A stretch of DNA of 64,000 bases from contig NC_000964.3 in assembly GCF_000009045.1 (NCBI RefSeq), positions 4,092,001 through 4,156,000 of the forward strand. Reading direction: 5' to 3'. The number at the start of each line of letters is the position of its first letter. The stretch's first letter is position 1. The notes under the pieces are model-generated. The model made no database searches. It was given only the letters and a program-made list of their open reading frames with translations, and was not told where the DNA came from. Of the stretch, positions 3,915 to 42,435 are shown one piece after another. The translations under genes were made by a program, and so were the position numbers. Source of the stretch: Bacillus subtilis subsp. subtilis str. 168 (GTDB lineage Bacteria; Bacillota; Bacilli; Bacillales; Bacillaceae).

Positions 3915-4907
3915 CTAGAACTTATAACTTGTCAAAAGCTGTCTGAATACCAATTGCGTGGATTGATAAGGATCAAAATCTGAATCCTGAGATTGGAAGA
4001 TTTGCTCTGGGGTCAATGTCTCTGCGTTCTCTGATAACGTTTGAATCAGACTTTCCAAATATCCATTTAACTCTGATTTGGACGATTCATGTAGGGATTG
4101 ATGATTTACAGCGAGTTCTCTAAATCTGTTATCACTGATTAATTTTTTTCGAAGAGCTGCTAGCATCAAGTCAAGCCATGCAGGCTGGCCAAATGTAATA
4201 TTTAAAGCTAACGTTGCTTGATCAGATTTGGTGGAGTGCCATAAACCTCTTGGCAAATACAGCATGGTTCCCGGTGTTAAATTAACGATTTCTGCATCTG
4301 GCAGATCCTCTTTTGGCGGATCTCCTTTCCAATATGACTGTAAATCATCAGGATAGTAAGGAGCCTCTGATAAATCATAGTGCTGCATTGGATTGCTCAC
4401 ATTTTCATTCTTGGCAAGCTTCCATGTTTTCTCACCTTGAATTTGAAAAATCAAGTTGGTGTAGGCGTCAAAATGGGCTTTGAATCCCCCGCCATTTTTC
4501 GCCGCGTAAACAATGGCTTTGGAAGAAGTACCCGCAGGCAGTCTTAATTCCGCTTTGAGTTTTTCTATCCACCTTCTGACTTGGGGAATAAATAGGTCGG
4601 TGAAATCAAACTCTAATGCAGCCCCTTTTTCATACCACTCTAAAGCCTCTGCAGGTGACACAAGAAATCTGTCTGTGATCCCTTCAGATTCTTCAATCAC
4701 AGCATCACCAACGACCATGACTGGATTATTGTAGATAGCCAATACGTTTTCTAGCGTTCTAACCTTTTCAAACCCCGGTATGCTTGTAAATCTCTCCACT
4801 TCTCCTCTGGCTACCAAAGGTTTTACAGGCCAATATTCTTCTAAAAACTCACTCATCGTTACAGGACTGATGATAGACTCCAAAACCGATTCGGTTACAG
4901 CACTCAT
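3915..4907 (-). CDS. yxbC: JmjC/cupin 2-oxoglutarate-Fe(II) oxygenase
   Basis: HFD...WH facial triad (AHFDAYTN; PRGLWHST) and LTPGTMLYLPRG. ATG at 4907 follows a GGGAGG SD. Confidence 0.88.
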   Translation of the reverse strand: MSAVTESVLESIISPVTMSEFLEEYWPVKPLVARGEVERFTSIPGFEKVRTLENVLAIYNNPVMVVGDAVIEESEGITDRFLVSPAEALEWYEKGAALEFDFTDLFIPQVRRWIEKLKAELRLPAGTSSKAIVYAAKNGGGFKAHFDAYTNLIFQIQGEKTWKLAKNENVSNPMQHYDLSEAPYYPDDLQSYWKGDPPKEDLPDAEIVNLTPGTMLYLPRGLWHSTKSDQATLALNITFGQPAWLDLMLAALRKKLISDNRFRELAVNHQSLHESSKSELNGYLESLIQTLSENAETLTPEQIFQSQDSDFDPYQSTQLVFRQLLTSYKF

Positions 4908-4971
4908 ATTATCCCTCCCAAAAAAAGTAACTTCACCACAAAGATATAACATTTTTTTCTAAAAGTAAATA

Positions 4972-5000
4972 TTGACAGAATTATCAGAGGATTATAATAT
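4972..5000 (+). promoter_or_regulatory. SigA-type promoter for the peptide-yxbB-asnH transcript, overlapped by a CodY-like box
   Basis: TTGACA at 4972-4977. TATAAT at 4993-4998 (15-bp spacer) or TAATAT at 4995-5000 (17-bp spacer). AATTATCAGAGGATT at 4979-4993 matches the CodY consensus AATTTTCWGAAAATT at 12/15. Confidence 0.65.
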
Positions 5001-5048: not shown

Positions 5049-5117
5049 ATGAAAAAGGCTTATAAGAAACCTCGTCTTTTTGAACTGCGCCGTGCTGTAG
5101 CAGCTGGCGGCCATTAA
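5049..5117 (+). CDS. 22-aa putative RiPP precursor, copy 1: MKKAYKKPRLFELRRAVAAGGH
   Basis: AAGGAGG SD, ATG...TAA, YxxPxL motif. Too short for the ORF track; translated by hand. Confidence 0.82.
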   Translation: MKKAYKKPRLFELRRAVAAGGH

Positions 5118-5166
5118 TCTCATATAGCATTTGACATCTAGTACTCTATTTTAGGAGGGATGCTCA

Positions 5167-5235
5167 ATGAAAAAAGCTTATAAGAAACCTCGCCTTTTTG
5201 AACTGCGCCGTGCTGTAGCAGCTGGCGGCCATTAA
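5167..5235 (+). CDS. 22-aa putative RiPP precursor, copy 2 (identical peptide)
   Basis: AGGAGG SD 8 nt upstream. Differs from copy 1 only at synonymous sites (AAG>AAA, CGT>CGC). Confidence 0.82.
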   Translation: MKKAYKKPRLFELRRAVAAGGH

Positions 5236-5284
5236 TCTCATATAGCATTTGACATCTAGTACTCTATTTTAGGAGGGATGCTCA

Positions 5285-5353
5285 ATGAAAAAAGCTTATA
5301 AGAAACCTCGCCTTTTTGAATTGCGCCGCGCTGTAGCAGCTGGCGGTCATTAA
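5285..5353 (+). CDS. 22-aa putative RiPP precursor, copy 3 (identical peptide)
   Basis: AGGAGG SD. Differs from copy 2 only at synonymous sites (CTG>TTG, CGT>CGC, GGC>GGT). Confidence 0.82.
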   Translation: MKKAYKKPRLFELRRAVAAGGH

Positions 5354-5415
5354 TCTTATCCAAAACGATTAACGTTTGAGGCTATCACGCCAACTTGATA
5401 AGGAGGATGCTGAAG

Positions 5416-6150
5416 ATGATTACGGCTGAAGAATGCAGAACGTACAAAGAATTTGTTGATCTTTACCAATCCTATCTTTACCCCTTGCTTGGCGCCAGAC
5501 TGTCCCGGATGTATTCCCCCAAAAACAAAGTCATTATCGATATGGGCACAGGTCCAGGTTATTTAAGCATTCAGTTGGCTAAAAGAACAAATGCGCACGT
5601 GCATGCTGTCGATATTAACCCGGCCATGCATGAAATCGCTCAAGAAGAAGCTAAAAAAAGCGGAGTAAGCAGCCTGATTTCATTTGATTTGGAAGATGTC
5701 CACCATTTATCTTACGCTGACCAATATGCTGACTTCATCGTCTCCTACTCTTGCCTGCATCATTGGGAAGACGTTGTTAAAGGACTTAAAGAGTGCTATA
5801 GAGTTCTGGCTCCGGGCGGAAAAATTGTCATTTTGGATACATTTAATCCCCAAGGAAGCCATTTAGAGATTATGCGAAAACAAATCAAAGAACCGGAATA
5901 CTTCAGGTTTGTAAGAGAGGCATTTGAAGAAAGTTATTCCTTTGAAGACATTCACCAGTTTGTTCAGGATGCCGGCATTCCCAATTATTCATTAGAAACC
6001 TTTCACTTTTTACCGGAGGATTTTATAGAAAGCTTAGATGAGCTGGAGGATGCTCCCCTGTGGGAACAAAATGATCAAAGTACTGATCATGAAATTGAGT
6101 CTGTCACATGGATGTTAACGATAGAAAAAGAAAAGGAAGGTGCATTGTAA
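5416..6150 (+). CDS. yxbB: Class I SAM-dependent methyltransferase
   Basis: Motif [37 protein letters not shown]; AGGAGG SD at 5401. Confidence 0.9.
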
Positions 6151-6419
6151 TGATCAATGAATCAACTGTTTTATCCAAAAATCCAGAAATGCCATCAAGA
6201 AAATATTTGAAAAGCATTATTATAGAGCCGGGCATCACTTTAAATGAAATGGCATCAGATATTTATAACCATATCGACGGCAAGGTCAGCATACATGATA
6301 TTTGCTCAAAAATCGTCAATGAATATGATGTTGATTATCAAACCTGCTTAGAAGATTGTATGGAGCTGTTTGAGTTGCTTATTGATCATGAAGCAATCAA
6401 AGTTAAGCAGGGGGCATGA
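6150..6419 (+). CDS. yxbA: PqqD-family / RiPP recognition element (RRE) protein
   Basis: 89 aa with the PqqD-type pattern [31 protein letters not shown]...[12 protein letters not shown]; start overlaps the yxbB stop (TAATG). Confidence 0.82.
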
Positions 6420-6422
6420 GAA

Positions 6423-6905
6423 TTGGAAAAACAAAAAGTGCTTGCTTTACCAGACGATGTACATGAGCTGAGTACACACCGTTCTAAATCAATCGTAAAT
6501 TACATCATCACTCTGCTTGCCTTTGCCAAAAAACAAGGATTGACTCATCAAGATATTGTAAGCTGGATTCACGAGCAATATGAGGAAAGAGGATATTATG
6601 ATGAGTGGAGACACATTAACAGCCAACAACCAGTTGGATCATTTGTGGAACTCTTTATAAAAGGAAGACGTTTACTTTATGACAAAATTGAATTGTTTGA
6701 AACAGAAGATAAATATGTCGTAAATACCCACACTTGGTATGAAAAAGAACCTAGTGAGGCCTTTTTTTATTTTGAAATTGATCCCGAAGAATTTTCTGCG
6801 TACGCTTCCATTCTCGCAATCGAAAACGCAAAACGTCTCGGAATTAAAATCGATATTGTAAAAGAAACAGATGTAGAGACAGCTTATATCTATAAACATC
6901 AATAA
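6423..6905 (+). CDS. yxnB: Uncharacterised 160-aa protein
   Basis: TTG-start ORF in the operon between yxbA and asnH; no motif recognised. Confidence 0.8.
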   Translation: MEKQKVLALPDDVHELSTHRSKSIVNYIITLLAFAKKQGLTHQDIVSWIHEQYEERGYYDEWRHINSQQPVGSFVELFIKGRRLLYDKIELFETEDKYVVNTHTWYEKEPSEAFFYFEIDPEEFSAYASILAIENAKRLGIKIDIVKETDVETAYIYKHQ

Positions 6906-6925
6906 CGCTATTGGGAGGGAGACAT

Positions 6926-9169
6926 ATGTGCGGGCTCGCGGGTATTATAAATCTGGCTGCTCCCCGTTCTCAGGAATGTACCTTTCATATATTGAAAGGC
7001 ATGGCAGATGCCATCAGCTATAGGGGACCGGATGATGAACAATATCATATTGATTCCAAAGTCGGCTTTGCATTTCGGCGATTGTCCATTCTTGACCTTG
7101 TAAATGGACAGCAGCCCTTTTTAAATGAGGATGGATCAATCGTCGTTATGGTAAATGGAGAAATTTATAACTATAAAGAACTGAAGGCTTCTTTACACAA
7201 TCATATGTTTAAAACGACATCTGATTGTGAAGTAATTGTTCATTTATATGAAGAAAAAGGGATTGGATTTGTAGACGACATCATCGGAATGTTTTCAATA
7301 GCCATTTGGGACAAAAATAAAAACAAAGTATTTTTAGTTCGTGACCGCTTTGGGATTAAACCGCTTTTTTACACAGAGCTAAAACACGAGCTTATATTTG
7401 CCTCTGAAATAAAATCCCTATTTTCTCATCCTCACTGTCCCCGCCAATTTAATTGGAAAGAAGCACTCTCAGACATTTGGCTAAGCGGGGAAGCAGCCAG
7501 TAATCATAAAGAAACCACTTCCTTTTTTGTAAACATCCAAAATCTCGATGCTGGCCATTATCTCGAAATTAATTTGACAACAAATGAACGAAAAACAGCA
7601 AGCTATTGGTCTTTACAGGATATTTTGCTCAGGCAAGGCTATCGTGAGAATCTCCATCCCGATGACCTGATTGAAGGATATAGAGAACTGCTGGCAGATT
7701 CAGTCCATAGATGTTTACAAAGCGACGTTGAAGTCGGGTTGTTTCTTAGCGGTGGCATTGATTCAGCTGCAGTCGCACATTTTGCTGCAGAAAAACAGGA
7801 TCTCCATACGTTTACAGTATTAAGCCAAAGTACATTTACAAATGAAGATGCAAAATATGCCCATTGGCTGGCTAAAGATTTACACCTTCCAAATCATCAG
7901 GTTCTCTATCAATTAGGGAACGATGAGTTATTACAACCAGAGTCATATAAACATTTGTTATGGATCTGTGAAACACCGTTTTGCGGACCGGAACAATTAT
8001 ATAAGTTTCATTTACATAAGTATGCCAAAGCGATAAGGCCAAACCTGAAAGTCATGCTGACCGGCCAGGGCAGCGACGAATTTAACGGCGGTTACAGCAC
8101 GACACTTTCACCAGCCGAGAACCCAAGTTGGGAAGGATTTATTGAATCGGTCAATACGATGGAGATGAACCGGCTGCATCGGCTGCAGGGAAATATCTTT
8201 AGAGTGTGGGAGGAGCATTTTGGACTTTCTCCTATAAACCTTTCTTATTTAAAGAGCAATGATTCCAGCCAAGCAGATCCTTGGCAATCGTATGTCCTGA
8301 CAAAATACCGTGATCTGCAAATGTATAATTGCTGGCATGAAGATCGGATCGCCGCGGCTAATCATATCGAAAACCGTGTACCGTTCTTGGACCATCGGCT
8401 TGTTGAATGGGTTTGCGGAATACCTGATGGACTCCGTAAAGACTTGTTATGGGATAAGTCGGTATTGCGAAAATCATTAACAAATGAGCTGCATACAAGC
8501 TATACCCACCGGCCAAAGGTTCCTTTTTTCTATGGTAAGGACGTGAGATATACACATAAAATGATGTTTCATCTTCTGAAGAAAAACAATTATCAGCTTA
8601 TAGAGGAGGCCTTCTCTCACAGCGATGCCTCCAGCATAATACAGGTTGAACACATTCATGCCATCATGACATATTTGGAGGATGATCCTGAGTTTACAAA
8701 TTTTGAATTTTTATTAAGACTGGTGAACATGGGACTTTTATCAAAAATGACTAAAGAAACCCCTTCTGTTCAATTAGACATAACCAGCCATTTAGAATCG
8801 ATAACAATAAAAGACTGGCACTCACAGGAAGGTGATATTGCCAGTCGTTTAAATATCTCAGCCAATAAGTGTGAAGGACAAGATATTTTGGCGCTAAACC
8901 CTGGCGTCACTCTGTTAAGGCCGGAAAGCGATAGTGAGCATTGCATCTACATTGCGGAAGAAGGATTTATTCAGTTTATTGTTTCGGAGGAAGACGTCGG
9001 AGCTTGGCTGCATATTCTCTGCGATATTAATGGAAAAGACACACTTCATACGATTTTAGACAGACATGGTGTCAGCCTTGAAGAAGTGGCCAAATATATT
9101 CAAGAAGCCATCGAACACAATATCATTTTGATCAAACAAAAAAATCTGCCAGAAGGAGCATATAGATGA
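6926..9169 (+). CDS. asnH: Glutamine-hydrolysing asparagine synthetase-like amidotransferase with C-terminal extension
   Basis: N-terminal MCGLAG (Ntn Cys), RGPDD, PP-loop LSGGIDS, TGQGSDE; GGGAGG SD. Confidence 0.93.
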   Translation: MCGLAGIINLAAPRSQECTFHILKGMADAISYRGPDDEQYHIDSKVGFAFRRLSILDLVNGQQPFLNEDGSIVVMVNGEIYNYKELKASLHNHMFKTTSDCEVIVHLYEEKGIGFVDDIIGMFSIAIWDKNKNKVFLVRDRFGIKPLFYTELKHELIFASEIKSLFSHPHCPRQFNWKEALSDIWLSGEAASNHKETTSFFVNIQNLDAGHYLEINLTTNERKTASYWSLQDILLRQGYRENLHPDDLIEGYRELLADSVHRCLQSDVEVGLFLSGGIDSAAVAHFAAEKQDLHTFTVLSQSTFTNEDAKYAHWLAKDLHLPNHQVLYQLGNDELLQPESYKHLLWICETPFCGPEQLYKFHLHKYAKAIRPNLKVMLTGQGSDEFNGGYSTTLSPAENPSWEGFIESVNTMEMNRLHRLQGNIFRVWEEHFGLSPINLSYLKSNDSSQADPWQSYVLTKYRDLQMYNCWHEDRIAAANHIENRVPFLDHRLVEWVCGIPDGLRKDLLWDKSVLRKSLTNELHTSYTHRPKVPFFYGKDVRYTHKMMFHLLKKNNYQLIEEAFSHSDASSIIQVEHIHAIMTYLEDDPEFTNFEFLLRLVNMGLLSKMTKETPSVQLDITSHLESITIKDWHSQEGDIASRLNISANKCEGQDILALNPGVTLLRPESDSEHCIYIAEEGFIQFIVSEEDVGAWLHILCDINGKDTLHTILDRHGVSLEEVAKYIQEAIEHNIILIKQKNLPEGAYR

Positions 9170-10365
9170 GCATCTTTTATTCGTTTTCCGCACTTAGGGG
9201 ATTAGCAATGGGGATTTTTTCGCCTATTTGGATTCTTTATCTGATATCTAAAGATTATGATTTCCTTCAGATTGGATTAATGGGAGCGGTACTTGAAATT
9301 GCTAAGCTTATATTTGAAGTTCCTTCCGGCGTTTTTGCTGATCGTTATGGAATTAAAATTTCAATTGCCAGTTCATTCTTTTTCTCCATCCTTACATGGG
9401 CCTTCTTCCCTTTTATCGATTCAGCTGCTATTTGCATACTGGCTATGATCATATGGGCTTTATCAGATTCCTTAATTTCCGGTTCTTTTGAAACTTGGAT
9501 GAGCCGTGTCGCAGGGGAAGATCGATTCGGCAAAGAAATGATGAAAAACACACAATTGCTAATCACTTTTTTAATTATTGGAAGTATTGCCAGCGGGTAT
9601 TTGTATTCATTAAATATCTATTTTCCTTTCCTGCTCGTTATGGTGATCTACTTATTACTATTTATTTGGATGTCTGTATTTATTAAAGTCCCTTCTGTTT
9701 CCGAAACAAATCATGGGGATCAGAACCAACATGATTCGATAAAGATTATCAAAGAAAGTTTAAAAATTATCTTTAACAAAAAAAGGGTTCTTTTAATCGT
9801 CATAGCCGGTTTCTTTACAGCCACAGCCTATGACACAATTTCCCGTTACTGGCAGCCTTTTTTGAGTGATTTAGGCTTTTCAGAAAAGTCACTGGGATAT
9901 ATTTTTGCCCTAGGAGGGTTTACCGCTCTCGTTCTTTTGACATTAACCATCAGGTTCGAAAAGAAGATCGAAAAAAATCCATATCTCGCTTTAACCTCAT
10001 TGGATTCCATGGGCATGGTCATGACTTTTCTATTGTCTAGAGCATTCAGGCCGCTGGGCATTCCATGTACAGCGTTTTTGCTTGCAATTGAAGATATTCA
10101 TCATCCGATCGTAACAAGTTACTTAAATAAGTTTTTCCCCGATTCATACAAGAACACACTTTTCTCGTTAAACTCAGGGGTAGGAGCAATTGGAGAAATT
10201 CTTTCCGGTGTCATTTTCGGCATCATTTCCGCAGCCTTTGGGCTCTCTGCCATGTTTGTTGTTGTAGCTGTATTTCTATTAATCCCTATTATCCTTTATA
10301 CGATAGTGCCTAAGATTAAAGACAATGATATGAAAGTTCAGATTGAAAAATCCCAGCAAGTGTAA
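9166..10365 (+). CDS. yxaM: MFS efflux transporter
   Basis: Many hydrophobic segments; MFS motif A-like GVFADRYGIK; overlaps the asnH stop (ATGA). Confidence 0.88.
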   Translation: MSIFYSFSALRGLAMGIFSPIWILYLISKDYDFLQIGLMGAVLEIAKLIFEVPSGVFADRYGIKISIASSFFFSILTWAFFPFIDSAAICILAMIIWALSDSLISGSFETWMSRVAGEDRFGKEMMKNTQLLITFLIIGSIASGYLYSLNIYFPFLLVMVIYLLLFIWMSVFIKVPSVSETNHGDQNQHDSIKIIKESLKIIFNKKRVLLIVIAGFFTATAYDTISRYWQPFLSDLGFSEKSLGYIFALGGFTALVLLTLTIRFEKKIEKNPYLALTSLDSMGMVMTFLLSRAFRPLGIPCTAFLLAIEDIHHPIVTSYLNKFFPDSYKNTLFSLNSGVGAIGEILSGVIFGIISAAFGLSAMFVVVAVFLLIPIILYTIVPKIKDNDMKVQIEKSQQV

Positions 10366-10383: not shown

Positions 10384-10414
10384 AGAAGACCTTCTTATTA
10401 AAAGAAGGTCTTCT
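10384..10414. terminator. Bidirectional terminator yxaM/yxaL
   Basis: Perfect 13-bp stem AGAAGACCTTCTT/AAGAAGGTCTTCT. Confidence 0.8.
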
Positions 10415-32219: not shown

Positions 32220-32942
32220 TTAAAGGCCCATTTTGATCCATCTAGTTTTAGAAAAGCGAAGGACAATCGCATTTATGATAATAATTGAAACTAAATACAA
32301 AATAATAAATAAAACATCATTACTCCCAAGTGTCATGTTATCAGATTGCAGCACTCTTTCTATTCGGGGGTACATAGTGTTACCTGCCTCAAAAGGAGCA
32401 ATGAAACCAAACGTTTTATTGCTTATAGCTACTAAGATAACAGAAGTCATCCAATAAACGATACTGACACCTATACTAATTAATATATTAGGACATAACA
32501 CGCTTATAGTTCCGATAATTAGAATATACTGCAGTATAACTGCAGAAAATAAAAAAAGTAATAATGCAAAATGCGAAAAATCATGGTACATCAACGATAT
32601 GATTAGCAGGCCTAGCGTTATAAATGCAAAACATTCTAAAAATAAAACAGCTATCTTTTTATAAAAGAAAGTATAGATGTTCTCTCCAATTAACTTGTAA
32701 AAGAGAATATTTTTGTTTGAATACTCTCTATTAATAAAGAAAGCTATAACAAATGAAAATAACATCAAACCAAACTGGGTCGCAACAGTATAGGAGCTAA
32801 AGAAAAACATTTCAGGTGTAACATTACTGACTTTATCGATTCCAACAAGTAAAAAATAACCCAGCAAAAATAAAAATACAAACATTGCTCCTAAAATAAT
32901 GATAACTTTGTTGCTAATACTCTTTTTAAACTCTAATTTCAT
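32220..32942 (-). CDS. yydJ: ABC transporter permease, epipeptide immunity (EpeB)
   Basis: Six hydrophobic segments; last gene of the yydFGHIJ operon. Confidence 0.88.
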   Translation of the reverse strand: MKLEFKKSISNKVIIILGAMFVFLFLLGYFLLVGIDKVSNVTPEMFFFSSYTVATQFGLMLFSFVIAFFINREYSNKNILFYKLIGENIYTFFYKKIAVLFLECFAFITLGLLIISLMYHDFSHFALLLFLFSAVILQYILIIGTISVLCPNILISIGVSIVYWMTSVILVAISNKTFGFIAPFEAGNTMYPRIERVLQSDNMTLGSNDVLFIILYLVSIIIINAIVLRFSKTRWIKMGL

Positions 32943-32962
32943 CTCAAGCCCCCACTGTTTTA

Positions 32963-33592
32963 TTACTCATTTATATACACTTCAATTAATTTATCCACTG
33001 AATGATATTGTTGAATTTCTTGGTGATTAAATATATAATAATCCCCTTCTATCGCCTTTAAATCAGACAAATCATGTGTAATGTTGATGATAATCTTCTC
33101 GGGGTTCTCCTGAATATACTTGTTTAAGAAGCCATGAATCTCTATAACCGTTTTTTTGTCTAATGAATTCGTTATTTCATCTAAAACAATAATATTTTTA
33201 TCCTCTAATAAGAAACTGAGCAATTTTAATTTTTGCTTTTGTCCATCACTCAAATTTTTGATCAGAACTTTTCCATCAATATTATCCAGATTAAGTAAAT
33301 ATGCGATTTTATCTATCATTTTTGCATCAAATTTTTTACTCAAAAAGTGTAATAAAAAGTCCTTAGAAACATCATTAGGTATATTCGACGAGCTGGATAT
33401 TAAAGAAACATTTTGACGAATATCTCTGCCGATTCTTTTGCTATTATTCAACAAAAAGTCTTTAGCAAGCTGTGATTTACCGACTCCATTTTTTCCGACA
33501 ACGTGATTAATTTTCCCGCTCGAAAAATGCAAGTCGGTGTCCTGAAGTAACGTTTTGCCTTTCACTTTTAAAGTGTAATTCGCTATATTCAT
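32963..33592 (-). CDS. yydI: ABC transporter ATPase (EpeA)
   Basis: GKNGVGKS, LSDGQKQK, IVLDE. Confidence 0.9.
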   Translation of the reverse strand: MNIANYTLKVKGKTLLQDTDLHFSSGKINHVVGKNGVGKSQLAKDFLLNNSKRIGRDIRQNVSLISSSSNIPNDVSKDFLLHFLSKKFDAKMIDKIAYLLNLDNIDGKVLIKNLSDGQKQKLKLLSFLLEDKNIIVLDEITNSLDKKTVIEIHGFLNKYIQENPEKIIINITHDLSDLKAIEGDYYIFNHQEIQQYHSVDKLIEVYINE

Positions 33593-33741
33593 ATACATAC
33601 TCCTAGGAAATATTTGCATAATAATAAAATGTTCTGCCTTGTGATTTGTTACTAATGTCTAAGCTTTTGAGGTACCTCTTTCGTTTCCGATCCGGAAGCG
33701 AAAGAAATGTTTTTAGATGGCTAATTTGGAGATCTTTTACT

Positions 33742-34500
33742 CTAGTTTACAATATATAATATCCAATGTACAACTGAATTCACTGCAAGGCCAATCCCTA
33801 TAATTTGAATCGTAAGAACTAACCAATGATTTGTCTTAAAACGGCTATATTCATCTAAGCTCAGAAAAGCTAAAAGAATTTTGTAACCATCAGAATTCAA
33901 TATTGGGATTAAGTTCCACAATAAAGTAGACGAGAAAAGCATAAATGCCATAGTTAATGCTTCACTGGAAAATGTAAATTGATTTATTAATTCTAATGTA
34001 TTTATTAAAAGATAATTGATAAACAAGCCAAATAAATGAACGATTATCTTTTCATTTCTTGATAGCATGTAGGTTTCATTCAATTGGACATAAAAAGCAG
34101 GAAATACATAAAAATTCAGTTTGAATCCCACTTTATCAAAGTTTTTCCCGAAAAATTTTAAGGAATAAATATGTCCCAGTTCATGAAGCACTATATTCAT
34201 TATAAAATAAATAACTATAATTATCCACATTTTCCAGCCGTAAAATACTGAGGACAATCCATTTTGCAATTTTATTAAATGAATATAATTTAATATGAAC
34301 ATGAGAGCCGTAAAGGATAAGAACAGATAAAAAAACTTTGGTGATACTTTCTCTTTATACATTTTAAAACGTAATAATTGTTTATCTGACAGAGAATTTA
34401 AACTATTTTTATAGTATTCTCCGCTTTTTTTGTCTTTTATAAATACGTTGTTTTGCACAAGCACTTCATATTTTTCATCTTCATACTTTAAAATTTTCAT
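33742..34500 (-). CDS. yydH: Membrane metalloprotease, M50-like (EpeP)
   Basis: HELGH within TM segments; NLIPILNSDG. Confidence 0.88.
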   Translation of the reverse strand: MKILKYEDEKYEVLVQNNVFIKDKKSGEYYKNSLNSLSDKQLLRFKMYKEKVSPKFFYLFLSFTALMFILNYIHLIKLQNGLSSVFYGWKMWIIIVIYFIMNIVLHELGHIYSLKFFGKNFDKVGFKLNFYVFPAFYVQLNETYMLSRNEKIIVHLFGLFINYLLINTLELINQFTFSSEALTMAFMLFSSTLLWNLIPILNSDGYKILLAFLSLDEYSRFKTNHWLVLTIQIIGIGLAVNSVVHWILYIVN

Positions 34501-35440
34501 TATAGTATTTTTCCATATAAGGATAGAAGTAGTTTATTTTTTCTGCAGAGTTGAATAAGGAACCACAAACTCCACAAATAGAGGAAAATTCATAAGGAAT
34601 GTCAAATTCCTCTATTTTGTTATTTTCTTTTAAAATATTCAAAAACCATTTGAATCCTTCTTTTCTAAGAATAAATAATAGCAAATTGGAATTTAACTTT
34701 TCCACGGTTCTTTCGAAACTTTGGTTATATTCTTCCCTTAGGGTTATTTTCGTTTCAAAAATAGCAGGGGAACAACATGGATAAATTTCTCCATCATGAT
34801 GATATACAATGTCATATCCGGGACAATGTAAGGAATCTTCATCTTCAAGACTGTAAAATTTATGTATGTTTTCTTGCTTAATTCTAGTTTTAGCAGCGCC
34901 AACTGATATCATTGGAAATTTTGTTATCTTTACACCTAAGATTGAATCCCCCAATTCCTCTAAAATGTGGTTGGACATTTTGTCTTTGGTAACTGCCATA
35001 TTAAGAGAAATATCGATATCAGGGTATTTCCTGCTATGTTCTAATATGTTTTTAATACTGGAAGACTTGACAAATGGAGCATGGTACTCATCATAACTTA
35101 TAGTCAGTGCTATCACATTTAAAGAATTCATATCATGAAAGTACTCCTGGACCTTTTTCTTGCTCAAACCCCAAAATCCATTAGAGATCAACGTTATTTG
35201 TTTTTCATATGGTTTAATGATTTCCATTAGTTCTTTTAAAAATTTATAATCTAAAAAAACTTCCCCACCTGTAAAAGAAATCACTTGAATGGTTTTGTTT
35301 TTTGCAAATTCAGTTACTAACTCTCTTATGTATTCTTTTTCCATCCTGGTTGTTGAAGTTGGTGAACTAGAAAAACAACAATGGTCACAGGATGCATTAC
35401 ACCTTGAATCTAAATTGATTGATACTGTTTTATTATACAT
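34481..35440 (-). CDS. yydG: Radical SAM peptide epimerase (EpeE)
   Basis: CNASCDHC (CX3CX2C), FTGGE, C-terminal Cys residues. Confidence 0.92.
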   Translation of the reverse strand: MYNKTVSINLDSRCNASCDHCCFSSSPTSTTRMEKEYIRELVTEFAKNKTIQVISFTGGEVFLDYKFLKELMEIIKPYEKQITLISNGFWGLSKKKVQEYFHDMNSLNVIALTISYDEYHAPFVKSSSIKNILEHSRKYPDIDISLNMAVTKDKMSNHILEELGDSILGVKITKFPMISVGAAKTRIKQENIHKFYSLEDEDSLHCPGYDIVYHHDGEIYPCCSPAIFETKITLREEYNQSFERTVEKLNSNLLLFILRKEGFKWFLNILKENNKIEEFDIPYEFSSICGVCGSLFNSAEKINYFYPYMEKYYNENFKV

Positions 35441-35647: not shown

Positions 35648-36118
35648 ATTATCCCTCCTCCTTTTCTAATATAAACCAATTATTCTATATCATTCAATAC
35701 ATGTCAATATATTGTACCTAAAAAATCTGAAAAATGTCACTATTCTTGGTATATAAAGCCTATAGTCCTCTAGCCCCTCTAAGCTATACCGAATGAAAGG
35801 CCATAGTTTGATTTAAAGCTTCGTAATGAAAAGTAAAACATCAATATTGACTACACTAGTTAAGGGATATACAGATTTTAAGTGGAAGAAATGAGGCAAA
35901 CAATCTTACCCTAAACCAACCTGTACTGAAAAGCTGTTTTAAGCTCTTGCTTACCCCATTTGGCACCTCTTTCTCTCGTTTTAATTGTCTCTAAAAGCAG
36001 TTATGCGGTACTATCATATAAAGGTCCAATGTTTAAAAATAATGTCATACTTTTAAATTCACCTTATCATGCACATGCTCATAAAGAGGGGTTTATTCTA
36101 AAAAGGGGATGGACGGTT

Positions 36119-38044
36119 TTGGAAAGCAAGTACCTAGATCTACTCGCACAAAAATACGATTGTGAAGAAAAAGTGGTAACAGAAATCATCAATTTGAAAG
36201 CGATATTGAACCTGCCAAAAGGCACCGAGCATTTTGTCAGTGATCTGCACGGAGAGTATCAGGCATTCCAGCACGTGTTGCGCAATGGTTCAGGACGAGT
36301 CAAAGAGAAGATACGCGACATCTTCAGCGGTGTCATTTACGATAGAGAAATTGATGAATTAGCAGCATTGGTCTATTATCCGGAAGACAAACTGAAATTA
36401 ATCAAACATGACTTTGATGCGAAAGAAGCGTTAAACGAGTGGTATAAAGAAACGATTCATCGAATGATTAAGCTCGTTTCATATTGCTCCTCTAAGTATA
36501 CCCGCTCCAAATTACGCAAAGCACTGCCTGCCCAATTTGCTTATATTACGGAGGAGCTGTTATACAAAACAGAACAAGCTGGCAACAAGGAGCAATATTA
36601 CTCCGAAATCATTGATCAGATCATTGAACTTGGCCAAGCCGATAAGCTGATCACCGGCCTTGCTTACAGCGTTCAGCGATTGGTGGTCGACCATCTGCAT
36701 GTGGTCGGCGATATTTATGACCGCGGCCCGCAGCCGGATAGAATTATGGAAGAACTGATCAACTATCATTCTGTCGATATTCAGTGGGGAAATCACGATG
36801 TCCTTTGGATCGGCGCCTATTCCGGTTCCAAAGTGTGCCTGGCCAATATTATCCGCATCTGTGCCCGCTACGACAACCTGGATATTATTGAGGACGTGTA
36901 CGGCATCAACCTGAGACCGCTGCTGAACCTGGCCGAAAAATATTATGATGATAATCCAGCGTTCCGTCCAAAAGCAGACGAAAACAGGCCAGAGGATGAG
37001 ATTAAGCAAATCACAAAAATCCATCAAGCGATTGCCATGATCCAATTCAAGCTTGAGAGCCCGATTATCAAGAGACGGCCGAACTTTAATATGGAAGAGC
37101 GGCTGTTATTAGAGAAAATAGACTATGACAAAAATGAAATCACGCTGAACGGAAAAACATATCAACTGGAAAACACCTGCTTTGCGACGATTAATCCGGA
37201 GCAGCCAGATCAGCTATTAGAAGAAGAAGCAGAAGTCATAGACAAGCTGCTATTCTCTGTCCAGCATTCCGAAAAGCTGGGCCGCCATATGAATTTTATG
37301 ATGAAAAAAGGCAGCCTTTATTTAAAATATAACGGCAACCTGTTGATTCACGGCTGTATTCCAGTTGATGAAAACGGCAATATGGAAACGATGATGATTG
37401 AGGATAAACCGTATGCGGGCCGTGAGCTGCTCGATGTATTTGAACGATTCTTGCGGGAAGCCTTTGCCCACCCGGAAGAAACCGATGACCTGGCGACAGA
37501 TATGGCTTGGTATTTATGGACAGGCGAATACTCCTCCCTCTTCGGAAAACGCGCCATGACGACATTTGAGCGCTATTTCATCAAAGAGAAGGAAACGCAT
37601 AAAGAGAAGAAAAACCCGTATTATTATTTACGAGAAGACGAGGCAACCTGCCGAAACATCCTGGCAGAATTCGGCCTCAATCCAGATCACGGCCATATCA
37701 TCAACGGCCATACACCTGTAAAAGAAATCGAAGGAGAAGACCCAATCAAAGCAAACGGAAAAATGATCGTCATCGACGGCGGCTTCTCCAAAGCCTACCA
37801 ATCCACAACAGGCATCGCCGGCTACACGCTGCTATACAACTCCTACGGCATGCAGCTCGTCGCCCATAAACACTTCAATTCCAAGGCAGAAGTCCTAAGC
37901 ACCGGAACCGACGTCTTAACGGTCAAACGATTAGTGGACAAAGAGCTTGAGCGGAAGAAAGTGAAGGAAACGAATGTGGGTGAGGAATTGTTGCAGGAAG
38001 TTGCGATTTTAGAGAGTTTGCGGGAGTATCGGTATATGAAGTGA
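36119..38044 (+). CDS. fbp: Fructose-1,6-bisphosphatase class III
   Basis: [32 protein letters not shown]; TTG start after an AAGGGG SD. Confidence 0.93.
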
Positions 38045-38577: not shown

Positions 38578-40338
38578 TCAAAATCTAAAACCAAAAAATC
38601 TATTTTTATCTTCATTGTTTCTATCTAATTTTGCAACAATCATACCTTTCGACTCTAATTCTTGAAGGTCATCTAATAATAATTCATTTTTATTTATTGT
38701 TACAAAATATTGTCCGATCCTATTCTCTAACAGACTTGAATTGATATGTTTTAATAATGTACCTTTTACATGAGGATCAGGATTAGAATAAGATCCGTCA
38801 TGAATTAAAATATTCAAACTACACTTATTTATACACCTGTATAAAAACCAAGTAAGATCAAATATATTTATCTTCATATGGAGTCTACCATGTGAACGTT
38901 CATCCGGTATAGAACAAGAAATTTTGATCCTTCCTGTAGTTGATTGTTTTGCGTTACTTATTCTATTATCATATTCAAAATCTAAAAATCCATGTTGGTT
39001 GTATGTAACATCCATTAGATTATTAAAAAGCTTCTTTAACTCACTAACTATAGCGCTATAAGATTGAAACTCATCATAATACATTGAATTAACTCTTAAT
39101 ATTTCATGTTGAAGTTCATTAATCTTATCAAAAATATGGTTTTTTTTATCGTAGTCACTAATTCTCAATCTTACTTCCGCTAACTCTATTTCTTTCCTTC
39201 TTTGTTCTTCCATCACAATGGAAATATCCTCAATGAAATTGTTACTCTTTAAAATTCTGGCACTTGATTCCAGTTGTTCTGTTAATCCTTGCTTTTTGAT
39301 ATTAAGTTTTTTTAAATCGGCTTGTATTTTAACAATTTTATCTTTAAAATAACTCCCTCTACTTTCTACCATGAAATTATAGAACTCTTGGACTTTATTA
39401 TAATTCTGTTTTACTTCCTCTGGAAAAAAACCTACAATATCTTCATAGAATTTTTCTATATTTTCTAATTCTTTAATCTTAGTTACTTTTTTATTTAAAT
39501 CATCTATATTTCTTTGATATTGTTTACAAATATGTTCATTTTCAAATATTTCATTTTGTATTTTATTAAGTTCACTTTTAATTTCTGAGTACCTATTTGT
39601 ATCATTATTATATTTATTGGCAGTCTTAGTTTGATAGATAACTCTATTGTAATCCTCTATCTCATTTATTAATTCATCTTCCTTAACTTTTAAATCGCCA
39701 ATGTTAATATTCATTGATTCAATCAATTTTATTTCACTATTTAATTTTTCAATCTTATCCCGAAAAACCTTTATGTTTTTTTCTGTATGAGTTGGTAAAG
39801 TAAAAAGATAGTTAAGTAATTTATATTGTTTTAACCCTCCCCTATTCGGTAAAACTATATCATTAAACCCTGTCTTTTCGTCTCTTATAATATACTCCCT
39901 TAACGCCGCAAAAGTTATATCCTCTTTCTCACCCTTTAAAATTTCCTTTTCAATAAATTTTTTATATACACTTATACTAACTTTTTTCCATTCCTCCAAA
40001 TTAAAAGTTAAAGAAGTATCATGTAATGTATAACCATGTTTAGGAGAATTAAAAGATCTAGCAAGGAATACTTGATTTCCATCAATTTCCACATTCAAAA
40101 CAATAAAAACGTTTTTATTGAGAAGAATTTCATTTGTCGTATAAAAATTTGATATAGTCTTCCCTAGTAAAAAGGAGATGCATTCAATCATCGTTGACTT
40201 ACCTACACCATTAGTCTCTTCATGATCTTCTCTCTTTTCACCAAGTATTATATTTACTCCTACAGCATTAAATTTATACTCTTTCAAAATTTCTTGGGAA
40301 TTGCAAACAAAAAGATTTTTTATAATCATAACAATCAC
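38578..40338 (-). CDS. yydD: SMC/Rad50-like ABC ATPase with long coiled coil (ABC-3C / Lamassu LmuB-like)
   Basis: Walker A NGVGKST, long heptad-rich region, signature-like RSHG, Walker B ILIHD. Confidence 0.82.
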   Translation of the reverse strand: MIVMIIKNLFVCNSQEILKEYKFNAVGVNIILGEKREDHEETNGVGKSTMIECISFLLGKTISNFYTTNEILLNKNVFIVLNVEIDGNQVFLARSFNSPKHGYTLHDTSLTFNLEEWKKVSISVYKKFIEKEILKGEKEDITFAALREYIIRDEKTGFNDIVLPNRGGLKQYKLLNYLFTLPTHTEKNIKVFRDKIEKLNSEIKLIESMNINIGDLKVKEDELINEIEDYNRVIYQTKTANKYNNDTNRYSEIKSELNKIQNEIFENEHICKQYQRNIDDLNKKVTKIKELENIEKFYEDIVGFFPEEVKQNYNKVQEFYNFMVESRGSYFKDKIVKIQADLKKLNIKKQGLTEQLESSARILKSNNFIEDISIVMEEQRRKEIELAEVRLRISDYDKKNHIFDKINELQHEILRVNSMYYDEFQSYSAIVSELKKLFNNLMDVTYNQHGFLDFEYDNRISNAKQSTTGRIKISCSIPDERSHGRLHMKINIFDLTWFLYRCINKCSLNILIHDGSYSNPDPHVKGTLLKHINSSLLENRIGQYFVTINKNELLLDDLQELESKGMIVAKLDRNNEDKNRFFGFRF

Positions 40339-40736
40339 TAACTCTCCGTTCTGCTAATCATATTTTGATTAAAAGAAACTTTACCTAATGAATATAAAAA
40401 AGTTAACGATAAATACAGTATCCGTTCAATATTCAAATTTATTATAATACCTTGACTCTTAGCATAATCAAGAAAAAGTTGATCAATATGTTTTTCCTTC
40501 TCTAACAGTTCATAAAGTATCTTTGATGAGTATAAAATATTTTCTTCCACAGCATTATATTTAGTTAATAAAAAATGATTCATTTCTGGCCTCTCCGCCT
40601 TTTCCTTTTTTAAAGGAGAATTATTCACTAGAGGAATAAGATCATTTCCAATTTGAATGTTTTTAAACTCATTTTCTAATAAAACATAAGAGTATTTGAG
40701 AATATTTTCAGCTGTTTCAATTTTAAGATCAATCAT
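40338..40736 (-). CDS. yydC: Small protein; putative ABC-3C middle component / LmuC-like
   Basis: Overlaps both neighbours (translational coupling); family assignment is from position and size only. Confidence 0.7.
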   Translation of the reverse strand: MIDLKIETAENILKYSYVLLENEFKNIQIGNDLIPLVNNSPLKKEKAERPEMNHFLLTKYNAVEENILYSSKILYELLEKEKHIDQLFLDYAKSQGIIINLNIERILYLSLTFLYSLGKVSFNQNMISRTES

Positions 40737-42174: not shown

Positions 42175-42435
42175 TACAAACATCCTCTCATAAGTATATT
42201 TATCCCCTATATATTTCTAGAAAACTTTTTATTCTATATCATCTTTACTCTTTAATATATTAAGACTCTTTCCACACCATCAAATAAATTATAACCTAAA
42301 CATAACTCTTTACTCATTTTAGTATTGTATTTAAGTCAAACATTGCATTGGTTGCTGAAATATTATATTCATTGAATTATTCCATTAAATAGCTTTTAGT
42401 TGAACTTTAGTCTTTCTGTAATGGTGGAGATGCTC

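What the first reader, a model, noticed from the sequence alone, without database searches (positions are those of the whole stretch)
8780..9169. AsnH has a C-terminal extension resembling a second RRE and keeps an intact glutaminase domain
Seen: AsnH is 747 aa, longer than typical AsnB (about 550-630 aa). It ends with a segment of short beta-like stretches followed by ...AWLHILCDINGKDTLHTILDRHGVSLEEVAKYIQEAIEHNII, which echoes the PqqD/wHTH 'iw.lidG..t..eI...........v..fl..L.....i' pattern. The N-terminal Cys (MCG) is retained. Established: lasso cyclases generally lack an active Ntn-glutaminase, whereas AsnB-like enzymes in some thiopeptide pathways amidate C-termini. Inference: AsnH is leader-guided and transfers glutamine-derived ammonia to the peptide, either at the C-terminal His carboxylate or at Glu12.
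Basis: inference. Interest (0 to 1): 0.7.

Follow-up and report, generated by a model that had tools for sequence, protein, structure and literature searches.

The report
AsnH: peptide-guided amidotransferase with fused RRE
The Bacillus subtilis gene long annotated as asparagine synthetase AsnH carries a peptide-recognition domain at its C-terminal end and sits in an operon with three copies of a 22-residue peptide, so it most likely modifies the C-terminal end of that peptide rather than only making asparagine.

Summary
AsnH runs from 6926 to 9169 and is 747 aa, starting Met-Cys-Gly. All glutaminase residues and the ATP PP-loop are intact. It has 161 residues beyond the Pfam Asn_synthase domain.

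The last ~85 residues (654-738; window 8885-9139) fold with high confidence as strands followed by three helices, the order that defines a RiPP recognition element (RRE). The best PDB fold match is a solved RRE (PbtF), followed by MccB and McbB. A profile comparison with the PqqD proteins of related clusters gives 81% probability.

The extension is conserved in about 50 clusters of 705-770 aa AsnB-like enzymes. These sit in RiPP-type neighbourhoods. One (39% identical end to end) matches the neighbourhood published in 2026 for the FzmA group, where FzmA adds hydrazine, or ammonia from Gln, to the C-terminal carboxylate of a 22-mer with a YxxP motif.

The window's operon encodes three identical 22-mers, MKKAYKKPRLFELRRAVAAGGH. 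Orthologous clusters keep YxxP and the C-terminal GGH. Two of their peptides have no acidic residue, so Glu12 is out and the C-terminal His carboxylate is the target.

The chemistry (amide, nitrile or another N-donor) is untested. I rate this a new member of a recently described kind.

The parts
4972..5000 (+). Promoter-like site (TTGACA, 17 nt, TAATAT) upstream of the first precursor gene
   Evidence: Consensus scan, 10 of 12 matches. This is a pattern match only.
5049..5117 (+). Precursor peptide copy 1, MKKAYKKPRLFELRRAVAAGGH (22 aa; YxxPxL motif; C-terminal GGH)
   Evidence: It is the first unit of a 118-nt tandem repeat and has AGGAGGG upstream.
5167..5235 (+). Precursor peptide copy 2, identical peptide
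5285..5353 (+). Precursor peptide copy 3, identical peptide with synonymous DNA changes
5395..6150 (+). YxbB, SAM-dependent methyltransferase. The true start may be the internal ATG at 5416, as in the Anoxybacillus orthologue.
   Evidence: Pfam Methyltransf_11 at 8e-25. A methyltransferase is conserved next to PqqD in L002, L008 and L013.
6108..6419 (+). YxbA, a discrete PqqD-family RRE. The start is probably at 6150 (MINEST...).
   Evidence: Pfam PqqD at 1.1e-10. NCBIfam lasso PqqD chaperone at 5e-7, below cut-off. Homologues of 86-89 aa.
6423..6905 (+). YxnB, 160 aa, function unknown
   Evidence: No Pfam, NCBIfam or PDB sequence hit. AF2 pLDDT 81, and Foldseek finds only de novo designs. Present in L002 but absent from L008 and L013.
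6926..7450 (+). AsnH N-terminal class II (Ntn) glutaminase domain, with the catalytic Cys2 retained
   Evidence: Pfam GATase_7 at 2e-43 and GATase_6 at 6e-37. Residues C2, D36, R52, N77, G78, E79, D100 are kept.
7679..8683 (+). AsnH synthetase (adenylating) domain. The PP-loop SGGIDS is at 275-280 and the E385/Y390 dyad is kept. The AsnB E348 position is Gln381.
   Evidence: Pfam Asn_synthase at 8e-69. Best PDB relative is 7ylz hydroxyamidotransferase at 1e-47. Column check.
8684..8884 (+). AsnH residues 587-653: conserved helix (LVNxGLL), a linker with a conserved DW, and a second helix
   Evidence: Alignment A1. AF2 helices 591-610 and 631-641.
8885..9139 (+). AsnH residues 654-738: fused RRE-like domain. 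Strands 654-657, 661-664, 673-678, 681-687; helices 688-700, 707-714, 718-730; strand 734-738.
   Evidence: AF2 pLDDT above 90 over this stretch. Foldseek top hit 8t19 PbtF RRE, then MccB and McbBCD. hhalign against PqqD proteins 81%.
9166..10365 (+). YxaM, an MFS transporter and likely exporter. Its start overlaps the asnH stop.
   Evidence: Pfam MFS_1 at 7.5e-26. An MFS gene is conserved in L002, L013 and L006.
10384..10414 (+). Terminator-like hairpin (13-bp stem plus a T-rich tail) ending the operon
3915..4952 (-). YxbC, a JmjC/cupin Fe(II)/2-oxoglutarate dioxygenase transcribed divergently. It is a candidate peptide hydroxylase. Its start is probably at 4907.
   Evidence: Pfam JmjC_2 at 1e-15. 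Conserved in the same position in L002 and L013. Solved as PDB 1VRB and the top structural homologue of the RiPP hydroxylase CzlI (PMC11575548).
3356..3835 (-). YxbD, a GNAT acetyltransferase. Whether it belongs to the cluster is uncertain.
   Evidence: NCBIfam rimI-like at 8e-11. GNAT genes lie beside the AS-RRE gene in L008, L010 and L013.

Best explanation
AsnH is a three-part enzyme. It has an intact Ntn glutaminase domain, an AsnB-type adenylating domain, and a fused C-terminal RRE (residues 654-738).

The proposed mechanism has three steps:
1. The RRE binds the N-terminal YxxP(x)L motif of the 22-residue peptides encoded three times at the head of the same operon. This holds the short C-terminal tail (…AVAAGGH) at the synthetase site.
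2. The enzyme adenylates the C-terminal His22 carboxylate with ATP.
3. Nitrogen released from glutamine in the glutaminase domain attacks the adenylate. The simplest product is a C-terminal histidine amide.

The discrete RRE YxbA presumably presents the same peptide to the other tailoring enzymes: the YxbB methyltransferase, the YxbC JmjC oxygenase and perhaps YxnB. YxaM would export the product.

Shown here: domain architecture, catalytic residues, RRE fold, conservation of the fusion, and conservation of the peptide and the gene set. Inferred: peptide binding, the site of modification and the chemistry.
For: **Architecture**
- Pfam and NCBIfam assignments and retained catalytic residues.

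**RRE**
- AF2 pLDDT is above 90 over residues 654-738, with strands then three helices. [quoted passage not shown]
- The Foldseek top hit is the PbtF RRE 8t19 (prob 0.98, TM 0.55 normalised to the target). It is followed by MccB, McbBCD and carbamoyltransferases, an enzyme family (PF02543) in which PMC12710340 reports RRE fusions.
- hhalign against six PqqD proteins from related clusters gives 81%, E 1.2e-5.
- PaaA-like_N (PF21475) is hit weakly by 5 of 37 relatives. From memory, that domain is the RRE of PaaA.

**Family**
- 52 representative clusters carry the extension at the end of AsnB-like enzymes.
- P0005 is 39% identical over the full length. Its locus has a 22-mer MRKYTKPVAKKVVFGTVLTNVC, a discrete PqqD, an NTase-like gene, AurF and MFS. 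That is the neighbourhood published for the FzmA group.

**Precedent**
- TsrC and ScdTA amidate peptide C-termini, and PesC makes a C-terminal nitrile via the amide (PMC13060819).

**Site**
- The peptides of B. subtilis, Anoxybacillus (L002), L008 and L013 all end in GGH and keep YxxP. The L008 and L013 peptides have no Asp or Glu.

**Not a standard AsnB**
- The position of AsnB E348 is Gln381, and Q/G/I/S/A/T across the family. D384 and R387 of AsnB align to N468 and H471.
- Deleting asnH gives no growth or muropeptide phenotype (PMC5485061).
Against: - No biochemical or genetic data link AsnH to the peptide.
- asnH is reported to complement an E. coli asparagine auxotroph (Yoshida 1999, as cited in PMC5485061), so it can make some asparagine.
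- Fold evidence is moderate: no Foldseek hit reaches E 1e-3. The Pfam PqqD model does not hit the extension. A profile search of PDB sequences gives only E 0.46 to PqqD 5sxy.
- I could not compare AsnH with FzmA itself. The link runs through P0005 and the published description of the group's neighbourhood.
- The B. subtilis cluster lacks the NTase and AurF genes common in that group.
- The nitrogen donor and the final product are unknown.
Confidence: 0.6

Rival explanations
1. Same enzyme logic but different chemistry. AsnH still acts on the C-terminal His carboxylate under RRE guidance. It either installs something other than a simple amide, or the amide is only an intermediate. Candidates are a nitrile made through a second adenylation (as in PesC), or a hydroxamate or hydrazide made from a glutamine analogue (as in TsnB9 and FzmA).
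For: PesC converts the amide on to a nitrile with a second ATP, and no single diagnostic residue is known. The closest solved relative of AsnH is the hydroxyamidotransferase 7ylz at 1e-47, ahead of AsnB. FzmA accepts Gln, Glu-NHOH and glutamylhydrazine. A methyltransferase is conserved in the cluster, as FzmH is in fzm.
Against: No N-N- or N-O-forming enzyme was recognised in the B. subtilis operon: there is no AurF, flavin N-oxygenase or hydrazine synthase. The authors of the PesC paper found no other homologue that they could confidently predict to form nitriles.
Confidence: 0.2
2. AsnH is primarily a true asparagine synthetase. The C-terminal domain is regulatory or vestigial, and the operon context is coincidental.
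For: The TIGR01536 equivalog score of 361 bits is above its 267 cut-off. The glutaminase domain and PP-loop are intact. asnH is reported to complement an E. coli asparagine auxotroph. Current reviews list it as an Asn synthetase.
Against: - The fusion with an RRE-type domain is conserved from Bacillaceae to actinobacteria and always sits in RiPP-type neighbourhoods.
- The carboxylate at the AsnB E348 position is lost. From memory (Meyer et al. 2010), that carboxylate is required for beta-aspartyl-AMP formation.
- D384 and R387 are replaced.
- The asnH deletion has no growth phenotype.
- The gene is co-oriented with three precursor genes, behind one promoter-like site and ahead of one terminator-like hairpin.
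Confidence: 0.12
3. The extension is an ordinary winged-helix domain that binds DNA or mediates dimerisation. It is not a peptide-binding RRE.
For: Individual family members give weak Pfam hits to HTH_47, MarR_2, HTH_20 and DnaD_N. The PDB sequence-profile hits are wHTH proteins such as NPRL2, TFIIE-beta and AsnC-type regulators at E 0.1-1.
Against: The element order is strands first and then three helices, which is the RRE order, not the alpha-beta-alpha-alpha-beta-beta order typical of DNA-binding winged helices. The best fold hits are RRE-containing RiPP enzymes, not regulators. hhalign against PqqD proteins gives 81%.
Confidence: 0.05
4. AsnH is a lasso-type or other macrolactam cyclase that joins an amine to the Glu12 side chain.
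For: AsnB-like enzymes paired with PqqD are the hallmark of lasso clusters. The leader has the lasso-like YxxPxL motif. AsnH gives a partial NCBIfam lasso cyclase hit (190 bits).
Against: - The score is far below the 525-bit cut-off.
- No B2-type transglutaminase protease is present in the operon.
- The intact glutaminase domain would be superfluous.
- The peptide is only 22 aa.
- Glu12 is replaced by Arg (L008) or Val (L013), and those peptides have no acidic residue at all.
Confidence: 0.03

Closest known systems
FzmA and the 'cluster 58' AS-like enzymes with a fused C-terminal RRE (Cha et al., bioRxiv 2026, PMC13622209)
   Same: Both have an intact glutaminase domain, an AsnB-type synthetase domain and a C-terminal RRE. 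Both use a 21/22-residue precursor with an N-terminal YxxP motif. Both co-occur with a discrete PqqD protein and an MFS transporter. A methyltransferase acts in the same pathway. AsnH is 39% identical end to end to an enzyme (P0005) in a neighbourhood matching that group.
   Different: The B. subtilis cluster has no nucleotidyltransferase, AurF, PepM or hydrazine-forming genes. It has a JmjC oxygenase, a GNAT and YxnB instead. The peptide ends in GGH rather than VR. I did not compare AsnH directly with the FzmA sequence.
TsrC (thiostrepton), ScdTA and PesC (nitrilobacillin): AS-like enzymes acting on peptide C-termini
   Same: All perform ATP- and Gln-dependent activation of a ribosomal peptide's C-terminal carboxylate. 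The Glu/Tyr dyad that PMC13060819 reports as conserved in these enzymes is present in AsnH as E385/Y390.
   Different: No fused RRE is mentioned for these enzymes in the texts I read. Their clusters have different tailoring enzymes (MNIO and HExxH for PesC). PesC goes on to a nitrile.
TsnB9-type hydroxyamidotransferase (PDB 7ylz)
   Same: It is the closest solved relative by sequence, at 1e-47 over residues 1-547.
   Different: It is 623 aa with no RRE. From memory and from PMC13622209, it acts on a polyketide carboxylate with a hydroxylamine donor. It keeps Glu at the AsnB E348 position, where AsnH has Gln.
E. coli AsnB (PDB 1ct9)
   Same: Same two-domain fold, N-terminal Cys, glutamine-binding residues and PP-loop. 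asnH is reported to complement an asparagine auxotroph.
   Different: AsnH has 161 extra C-terminal residues with an RRE. E348, D384 and R387 of AsnB are Q381, N468 and H471 in AsnH. AsnH is embedded in a peptide-modification operon.
Lasso peptide cyclases (McjC type) with PqqD/B1 partners
   Same: They belong to the AsnB superfamily, have a PqqD-type RRE partner, and use a YxxP leader motif.
   Different: From memory, lasso cyclases have a degenerate glutaminase domain. They need a B2 protease and an acidic residue in the core. None of these applies here.

Membership tests
RiPP recognition element (RRE, PqqD-like winged helix) | N-to-C order of three strands followed by three helices (strict definition in PMC12710340) | tested here: met
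   The AF2 model (pLDDT above 90) has strands 654-657, 661-664, 673-678 and 681-687, then helices 688-700, 707-714 and 718-730. There is one strand more than the minimal three, and a further strand after the helices.
RiPP recognition element (RRE, PqqD-like winged helix) | Structural similarity to solved RREs | tested here: met
   The Foldseek PDB top hit is the 8t19 PbtF RRE (E 0.02, prob 0.98, TM 0.55 by target), followed by MccB and McbBCD. The support is moderate, because no hit is at or below 1e-3.
RiPP recognition element (RRE, PqqD-like winged helix) | Sequence or profile match to the PqqD family | tested here: inconclusive
   Pfam PF05402 does not hit AsnH or its 36 relatives at E up to 1. 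hmmsearch against PDB gives 5sxy PqqD at E 0.46. hhalign against six PqqD proteins gives 81%, E 1.2e-5 over 45 columns.
RiPP recognition element (RRE, PqqD-like winged helix) | Binds the leader region of a co-encoded precursor peptide | not testable with these tools
   The only evidence is contextual: three 22-mers with YxxPxL in the same operon, and the same arrangement in relatives.
Glutamine-dependent AsnB-type amidotransferase | N-terminal nucleophile Cys directly after Met, plus the glutamine-binding Arg, Asn-Gly-Glu and Asp | tested here: met
   C2, R52, N77-G78-E79 and D100 are present, and are conserved in 18 of 20 full-length relatives.
Glutamine-dependent AsnB-type amidotransferase | PP-loop SGGxDS ATP pyrophosphatase motif and a family model score above cut-off | tested here: met
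   SGGIDS at 275-280. TIGR01536 scores 361 bits against a 267 cut-off.
Glutamine-dependent AsnB-type amidotransferase | Carboxylate at the AsnB Glu348 position. From memory, it is needed for beta-aspartyl-AMP formation. | tested here: not met
   Gln381 in AsnH, and Q/G/I/S/A/T in the family.
FzmA-type AS-like/RRE fusion acting on short YxxP peptides | Fused C-terminal RRE on an AS-like enzyme | tested here: met
FzmA-type AS-like/RRE fusion acting on short YxxP peptides | 21/22-residue precursor with an N-terminal YxxP motif encoded nearby | tested here: met
   Three 22-mers with YKKP at residues 5-8.
FzmA-type AS-like/RRE fusion acting on short YxxP peptides | Co-occurrence with a discrete PqqD and MFS, and in most members with a nucleotidyltransferase and AurF | tested here: inconclusive
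   PqqD (YxbA) and MFS (YxaM) are present. No NTase or AurF is present. YxnB is not an NTase by sequence or fold.
FzmA-type AS-like/RRE fusion acting on short YxxP peptides | Sequence relationship to FzmA itself | not tested
The proxy is 39% identity to P0005, whose neighbourhood fits the published description.
FzmA-type AS-like/RRE fusion acting on short YxxP peptides | [quoted passage not shown] | not testable with these tools
   Indirect support: GGH-COOH is the only conserved carboxylate in the peptide family.
Lasso peptide cyclase | Family model above cut-off, a B2 protease partner, and an acidic acceptor residue in the core | tested here: not met
   NF033535 scores 190 bits against a 525 cut-off. 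No protease is present in the operon. The acidic residue is not conserved.

The most novel reading that the evidence does not exclude
B. subtilis 168 carries an unrecognised RiPP class. A short cationic carrier peptide would have its C-terminal histidine converted into a warhead. AsnH would amidate it, or convert it to a nitrile. YxbC would hydroxylate it and YxbB would methylate it. YxaM would export the product.

The GNAT YxbD would act as self-immunity by acetylating the released histidine analogue, as MccE does for processed microcin C. The product would be a Trojan-horse antimetabolite, for example against histidyl-tRNA synthetase or a histidine-dependent enzyme.
Probability: 0.15. Interest if true: 0.85.

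Novelty: new member of a known kind. Interest (0 to 1): 0.6.

Why it matters
AsnH has been listed as one of three asparagine synthetases of the best-studied Gram-positive model organism since 1999. The evidence here says it is instead the core enzyme of a cryptic ribosomal-peptide pathway, made up of three precursor copies, two RREs, a methyltransferase, a JmjC oxygenase and an exporter.

This corrects a textbook annotation. It also places a genetically tractable, laboratory-safe member of the newly described FzmA-like enzyme group in B. subtilis 168. The peptide is only 22 residues long and easy to synthesise, so the chemistry and the roles of the two RREs can be tested directly.

Enzymes that amidate or otherwise derivatise peptide C-termini under leader control are also of biocatalytic interest.

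Tried and rejected
- **Word-indexed homologue searches.** Searches with the extension, YxnB and YxbA returned only near-identical Bacillus proteins. The exhaustive phmmer search was needed to find the family.
- **Sequence-only detection of an RRE.** This was weak. There was no Pfam PqqD hit, and the profile search against PDB gave E 0.1-1 to assorted winged helices and 0.46 to PqqD. hhalign against YxbA alone gave 3%, and against four close YxbA homologues 26%. Only a more diverse set of six PqqD proteins gave 81%.
- **YxnB as the counterpart of the FzmU nucleotidyltransferase.** Rejected. It has no sequence similarity to the NTase-like protein of L006. It has no family hit. Its fold matches only de novo designed proteins.
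- **Precursor in L003 (Streptoverticillium).** No YxxP short ORF was found within 6 kb.
- **Supplements of the two van der Donk preprints.** They were not held, or did not mention B. subtilis or AsnH. Whether the authors' network already contains AsnH is unknown.
- **Literature.** Searches for asnH, yxbA, yxnB, yxbB, yxbC or yxaM together with RiPP terms found no characterisation of this operon.
- **Lasso cyclase and Glu12 isopeptide readings.** Rejected on the grounds given under rival explanations.
Full report
**Where this is.** The window comes from a Bacillus subtilis chromosome. The AsnH protein belongs to a 90% cluster whose named members are 'asparagine synthase (glutamine-hydrolyzing) [Bacillus subtilis]'. 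The 22-aa peptide described below is on record on a 4,215,606-bp contig. From memory, the gene order matches the yxbB-yxbA-yxnB-asnH-yxaM operon of strain 168.

**Checking the observation.** The ORF list shows 6911..9169 (+). The ATG at 6926 follows GGGAGGGAG and gives a 747-aa protein starting MCGLAGII. Pfam assigns GATase_7 to residues 51-166 and Asn_synthase to 252-586. The last 161 residues get only a sub-threshold DnaD_N winged-helix hit.

**The enzyme core.**
- NCBIfam TIGR01536 scores 361 bits against a cut-off of 267.
- The closest solved relative is the hydroxyamidotransferase 7ylz (1e-47), ahead of E. coli AsnB 1ct9 (1e-36).
- Using the printed alignment to 1ct9, AsnB D33, R49, N74-G75-E76 and D98 correspond to AsnH D36, R52, N77-G78-E79 and D100. 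Cys2 follows the initiator Met.
- In an alignment of 20 full-length relatives, these residues are identical in 18.
- The PP-loop SGGIDS (275-280) is present. So is the Glu/Tyr dyad (E385, Y390) that the nitrilobacillin paper found conserved in AS-like enzymes acting on carboxylates.
- There is one notable difference from AsnB. The AsnB E348 position is Gln381 in AsnH, and never a carboxylate in the glutaminase-intact members. D384 and R387 of AsnB align to N468 and H471.
- From memory (Meyer et al. 2010), E348 is required for beta-aspartyl-AMP formation. My assignment of D384/R387 as the aspartate-binding dyad is also from memory.

**The extension.**
- An exhaustive phmmer search with residues 590-747 found 52 representative proteins. 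Nearly all match at the C-terminal end of 705-770 aa proteins or fragments of them.
- The alignment of 37 sequences (A1) shows a conserved helix (LVNxGLL), a DW motif, and a block with near-invariant W694, L698 and G703.
- AlphaFold2 on this alignment gives mean pLDDT 88, and above 90 for residues 654-738.
- The predicted elements are strands 654-657, 661-664, 673-678 and 681-687, helices 688-700, 707-714 and 718-730, and a final strand 734-738.
- Strands followed by three helices is the strict RRE definition used in PMC12710340.
- The Foldseek PDB top hit is the solved RRE of PbtF (8t19; E 0.02, prob 0.98, TM 0.55 by target). After it come carbamoyltransferases (GdmN, NovN), MccB and McbBCD. 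PMC12710340 reports RREs fused to carbamoyltransferases (PF02543).
- No Foldseek hit is at or below 1e-3, so the fold evidence is moderate. The 60 N-terminal linker residues in the query dilute the score.
- Sequence evidence is weak with standard models. A local hhalign of the trimmed family profile against six Pfam-verified PqqD proteins from the related clusters gives 81% probability, E 1.2e-5, in the register of helices 1-3.
- I conclude with about 85% confidence that the extension is an RRE-type domain. It is the second RRE in the operon, because YxbA is a PqqD protein (Pfam 1.1e-10).

**Context in the window.**
- A promoter-like site lies at 4972-5000 (TTGACA, 17 nt, TAATAT).
- It is followed by three 118-nt tandem units, each with a ribosome-binding site and the same 22-codon ORF, MKKAYKKPRLFELRRAVAAGGH.
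- Next come YxbB (methyltransferase), YxbA (PqqD), YxnB (unknown), AsnH and YxaM (MFS).
- A 13-bp-stem terminator lies at 10384-10414.
- Transcribed divergently are YxbC, a JmjC Fe/2OG dioxygenase, and YxbD, a GNAT. YxbC is solved as 1VRB and is the top structural homologue of the RiPP phenylalanine hydroxylase CzlI (PMC11575548).

**Relatives elsewhere.**
- *Anoxybacillus mongoliensis* (L002) has the whole set in synteny. It has two copies of MKKEYKKPRAFELRRAVIAGGH, and its AsnH homologue is 53% identical.
- L008 (P0002, 49% identical) has GNAT, AS-RRE, the peptide MKAYVKPRLFRLRRAVVAGGH, PqqD, a methyltransferase, a B12-radical SAM enzyme and an S9 peptidase.
- L013 (P0036, 43% identical) has JmjC, the peptide MKKAYKTPKVVVIRNANITGGH, a methyltransferase, PqqD, GNAT, MFS and AS-RRE.
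- The recurring set is therefore the peptide, AS-RRE, PqqD and a methyltransferase. JmjC, GNAT and MFS each occur in most but not all of these loci. YxnB is specific to Bacillaceae.
- More distant members sit beside YcaO and nitroreductase genes (L012), or beside five short ORFs and an ABC transporter (L014).
- P0005 (39% identical over the full length) sits in an actinobacterial locus. That locus has a 22-mer MRKYTKPVAKKVVFGTVLTNVC, a CAAX-protease-like gene, an NTase-like gene, PqqD, AurF and MFS.

**Comparison with the literature.**
- A September 2026 preprint (PMC13622209) describes a sequence-similarity cluster of 89 AS-like enzymes with a fused C-terminal RRE.
- These co-occur with discrete PqqD (79%), nucleotidyltransferases (62%), AurF-like proteins (60%) and MFS (54%). 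Their precursors are 21/22-mers with an N-terminal YxxP motif.
[quoted passage not shown] With L-Gln it simply amidates that C-terminus.
- The P0005 locus matches that description, and AsnH is a full-length homologue of P0005.
- TsrC and ScdTA amidate peptide C-termini. PesC goes from the amide on to a nitrile.
- None of the texts I could read mention B. subtilis AsnH. Searches combining the operon's gene names with RiPP terms found nothing.

**Mechanism proposed.**
- The RRE binds the YxxP(x)L motif at residues 5-10. The 12-residue tail then reaches the synthetase site.
- The His22 carboxylate is adenylated and attacked by ammonia tunnelled from the glutaminase site.
- The choice of site rests on comparison. 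GGH at the C-terminal end is invariant in four diverged clusters. Position 12 is E, E, R and V, and two of the peptides have no acidic residue at all.
- Loss of the E348, D384 and R387 equivalents fits a substrate that has no free alpha-amino acid moiety. That point is inference.

**What argues against.**
- asnH complemented an E. coli asparagine auxotroph (Yoshida 1999, as cited in PMC5485061), so some asparagine synthesis is possible. That may be promiscuity under expression from a plasmid.
- The asnH deletion has no growth or muropeptide phenotype.
- The nitrogen donor, the final functional group, and the roles of YxbA, YxbB, YxbC, YxbD and YxnB are open.

**Verdict.** It is a new, uncharacterised member (the GGH-type cluster) of a kind described only in 2026.

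Noticed in passing
window 6423-6905 (+): YxnB (160 aa) has no hit in Pfam, NCBIfam or PDB sequences, and its homologues are found only in Bacillaceae. The AF2 model (pLDDT 81, pTM 0.75) is a helical bundle packed on a four-stranded sheet, and it matches only de novo designed proteins in the PDB. Its role in the operon is unexplained.
   Followed up: partly
family members P0012 and P0034 (found with the AsnH extension; not in the window): Two AS-like proteins carry the same C-terminal extension but have lost the N-terminal Cys and the glutamine-binding residues. They keep Glu at the AsnB E348 position and lack the Tyr of the dyad. They may be cyclase-like relatives with a fused RRE.
   Followed up: no
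window 32220-35440 (-), GC about 0.30: Four co-oriented genes include a radical SAM enzyme (34481-35440) and an ABC ATPase (32963-33619), in a low-GC stretch next to fbp (35960-38044). From memory this is the yydFGHIJ epipeptide locus, a second RiPP cluster in the window.
   Followed up: partly
window 38578-42183 (-), GC about 0.28: A low-GC three-gene island encodes a DUF2326 protein with PADLOC hits to PDC-M68B (4.5e-46) and LmuB (6e-12), a 146-aa protein, and a metallophosphoesterase that hits a PADLOC 'Effector endonuclease' model (1e-65). It is a candidate Lamassu-like anti-phage defence system.
   Followed up: partly
L012 and L014 (related loci): The same AS-like/RRE fusion occurs next to YcaO and nitroreductase genes (L012). 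It also occurs upstream of five tandem 51-76 aa ORFs that share a PG(L/I)xAK...AGQ motif, plus an ABC transporter (L014). This suggests that leader-guided C-terminal modification has been recruited into several RiPP classes.
   Followed up: no
window 5049-5402 (+): The three precursor genes lie in 118-nt tandem units. Units 1 and 2 are 98% identical in DNA. Copy 3 encodes the same peptide with synonymous changes, and unit 3 is 67% identical overall. Anoxybacillus has two copies, while L008 and L013 have one.
   Followed up: partly
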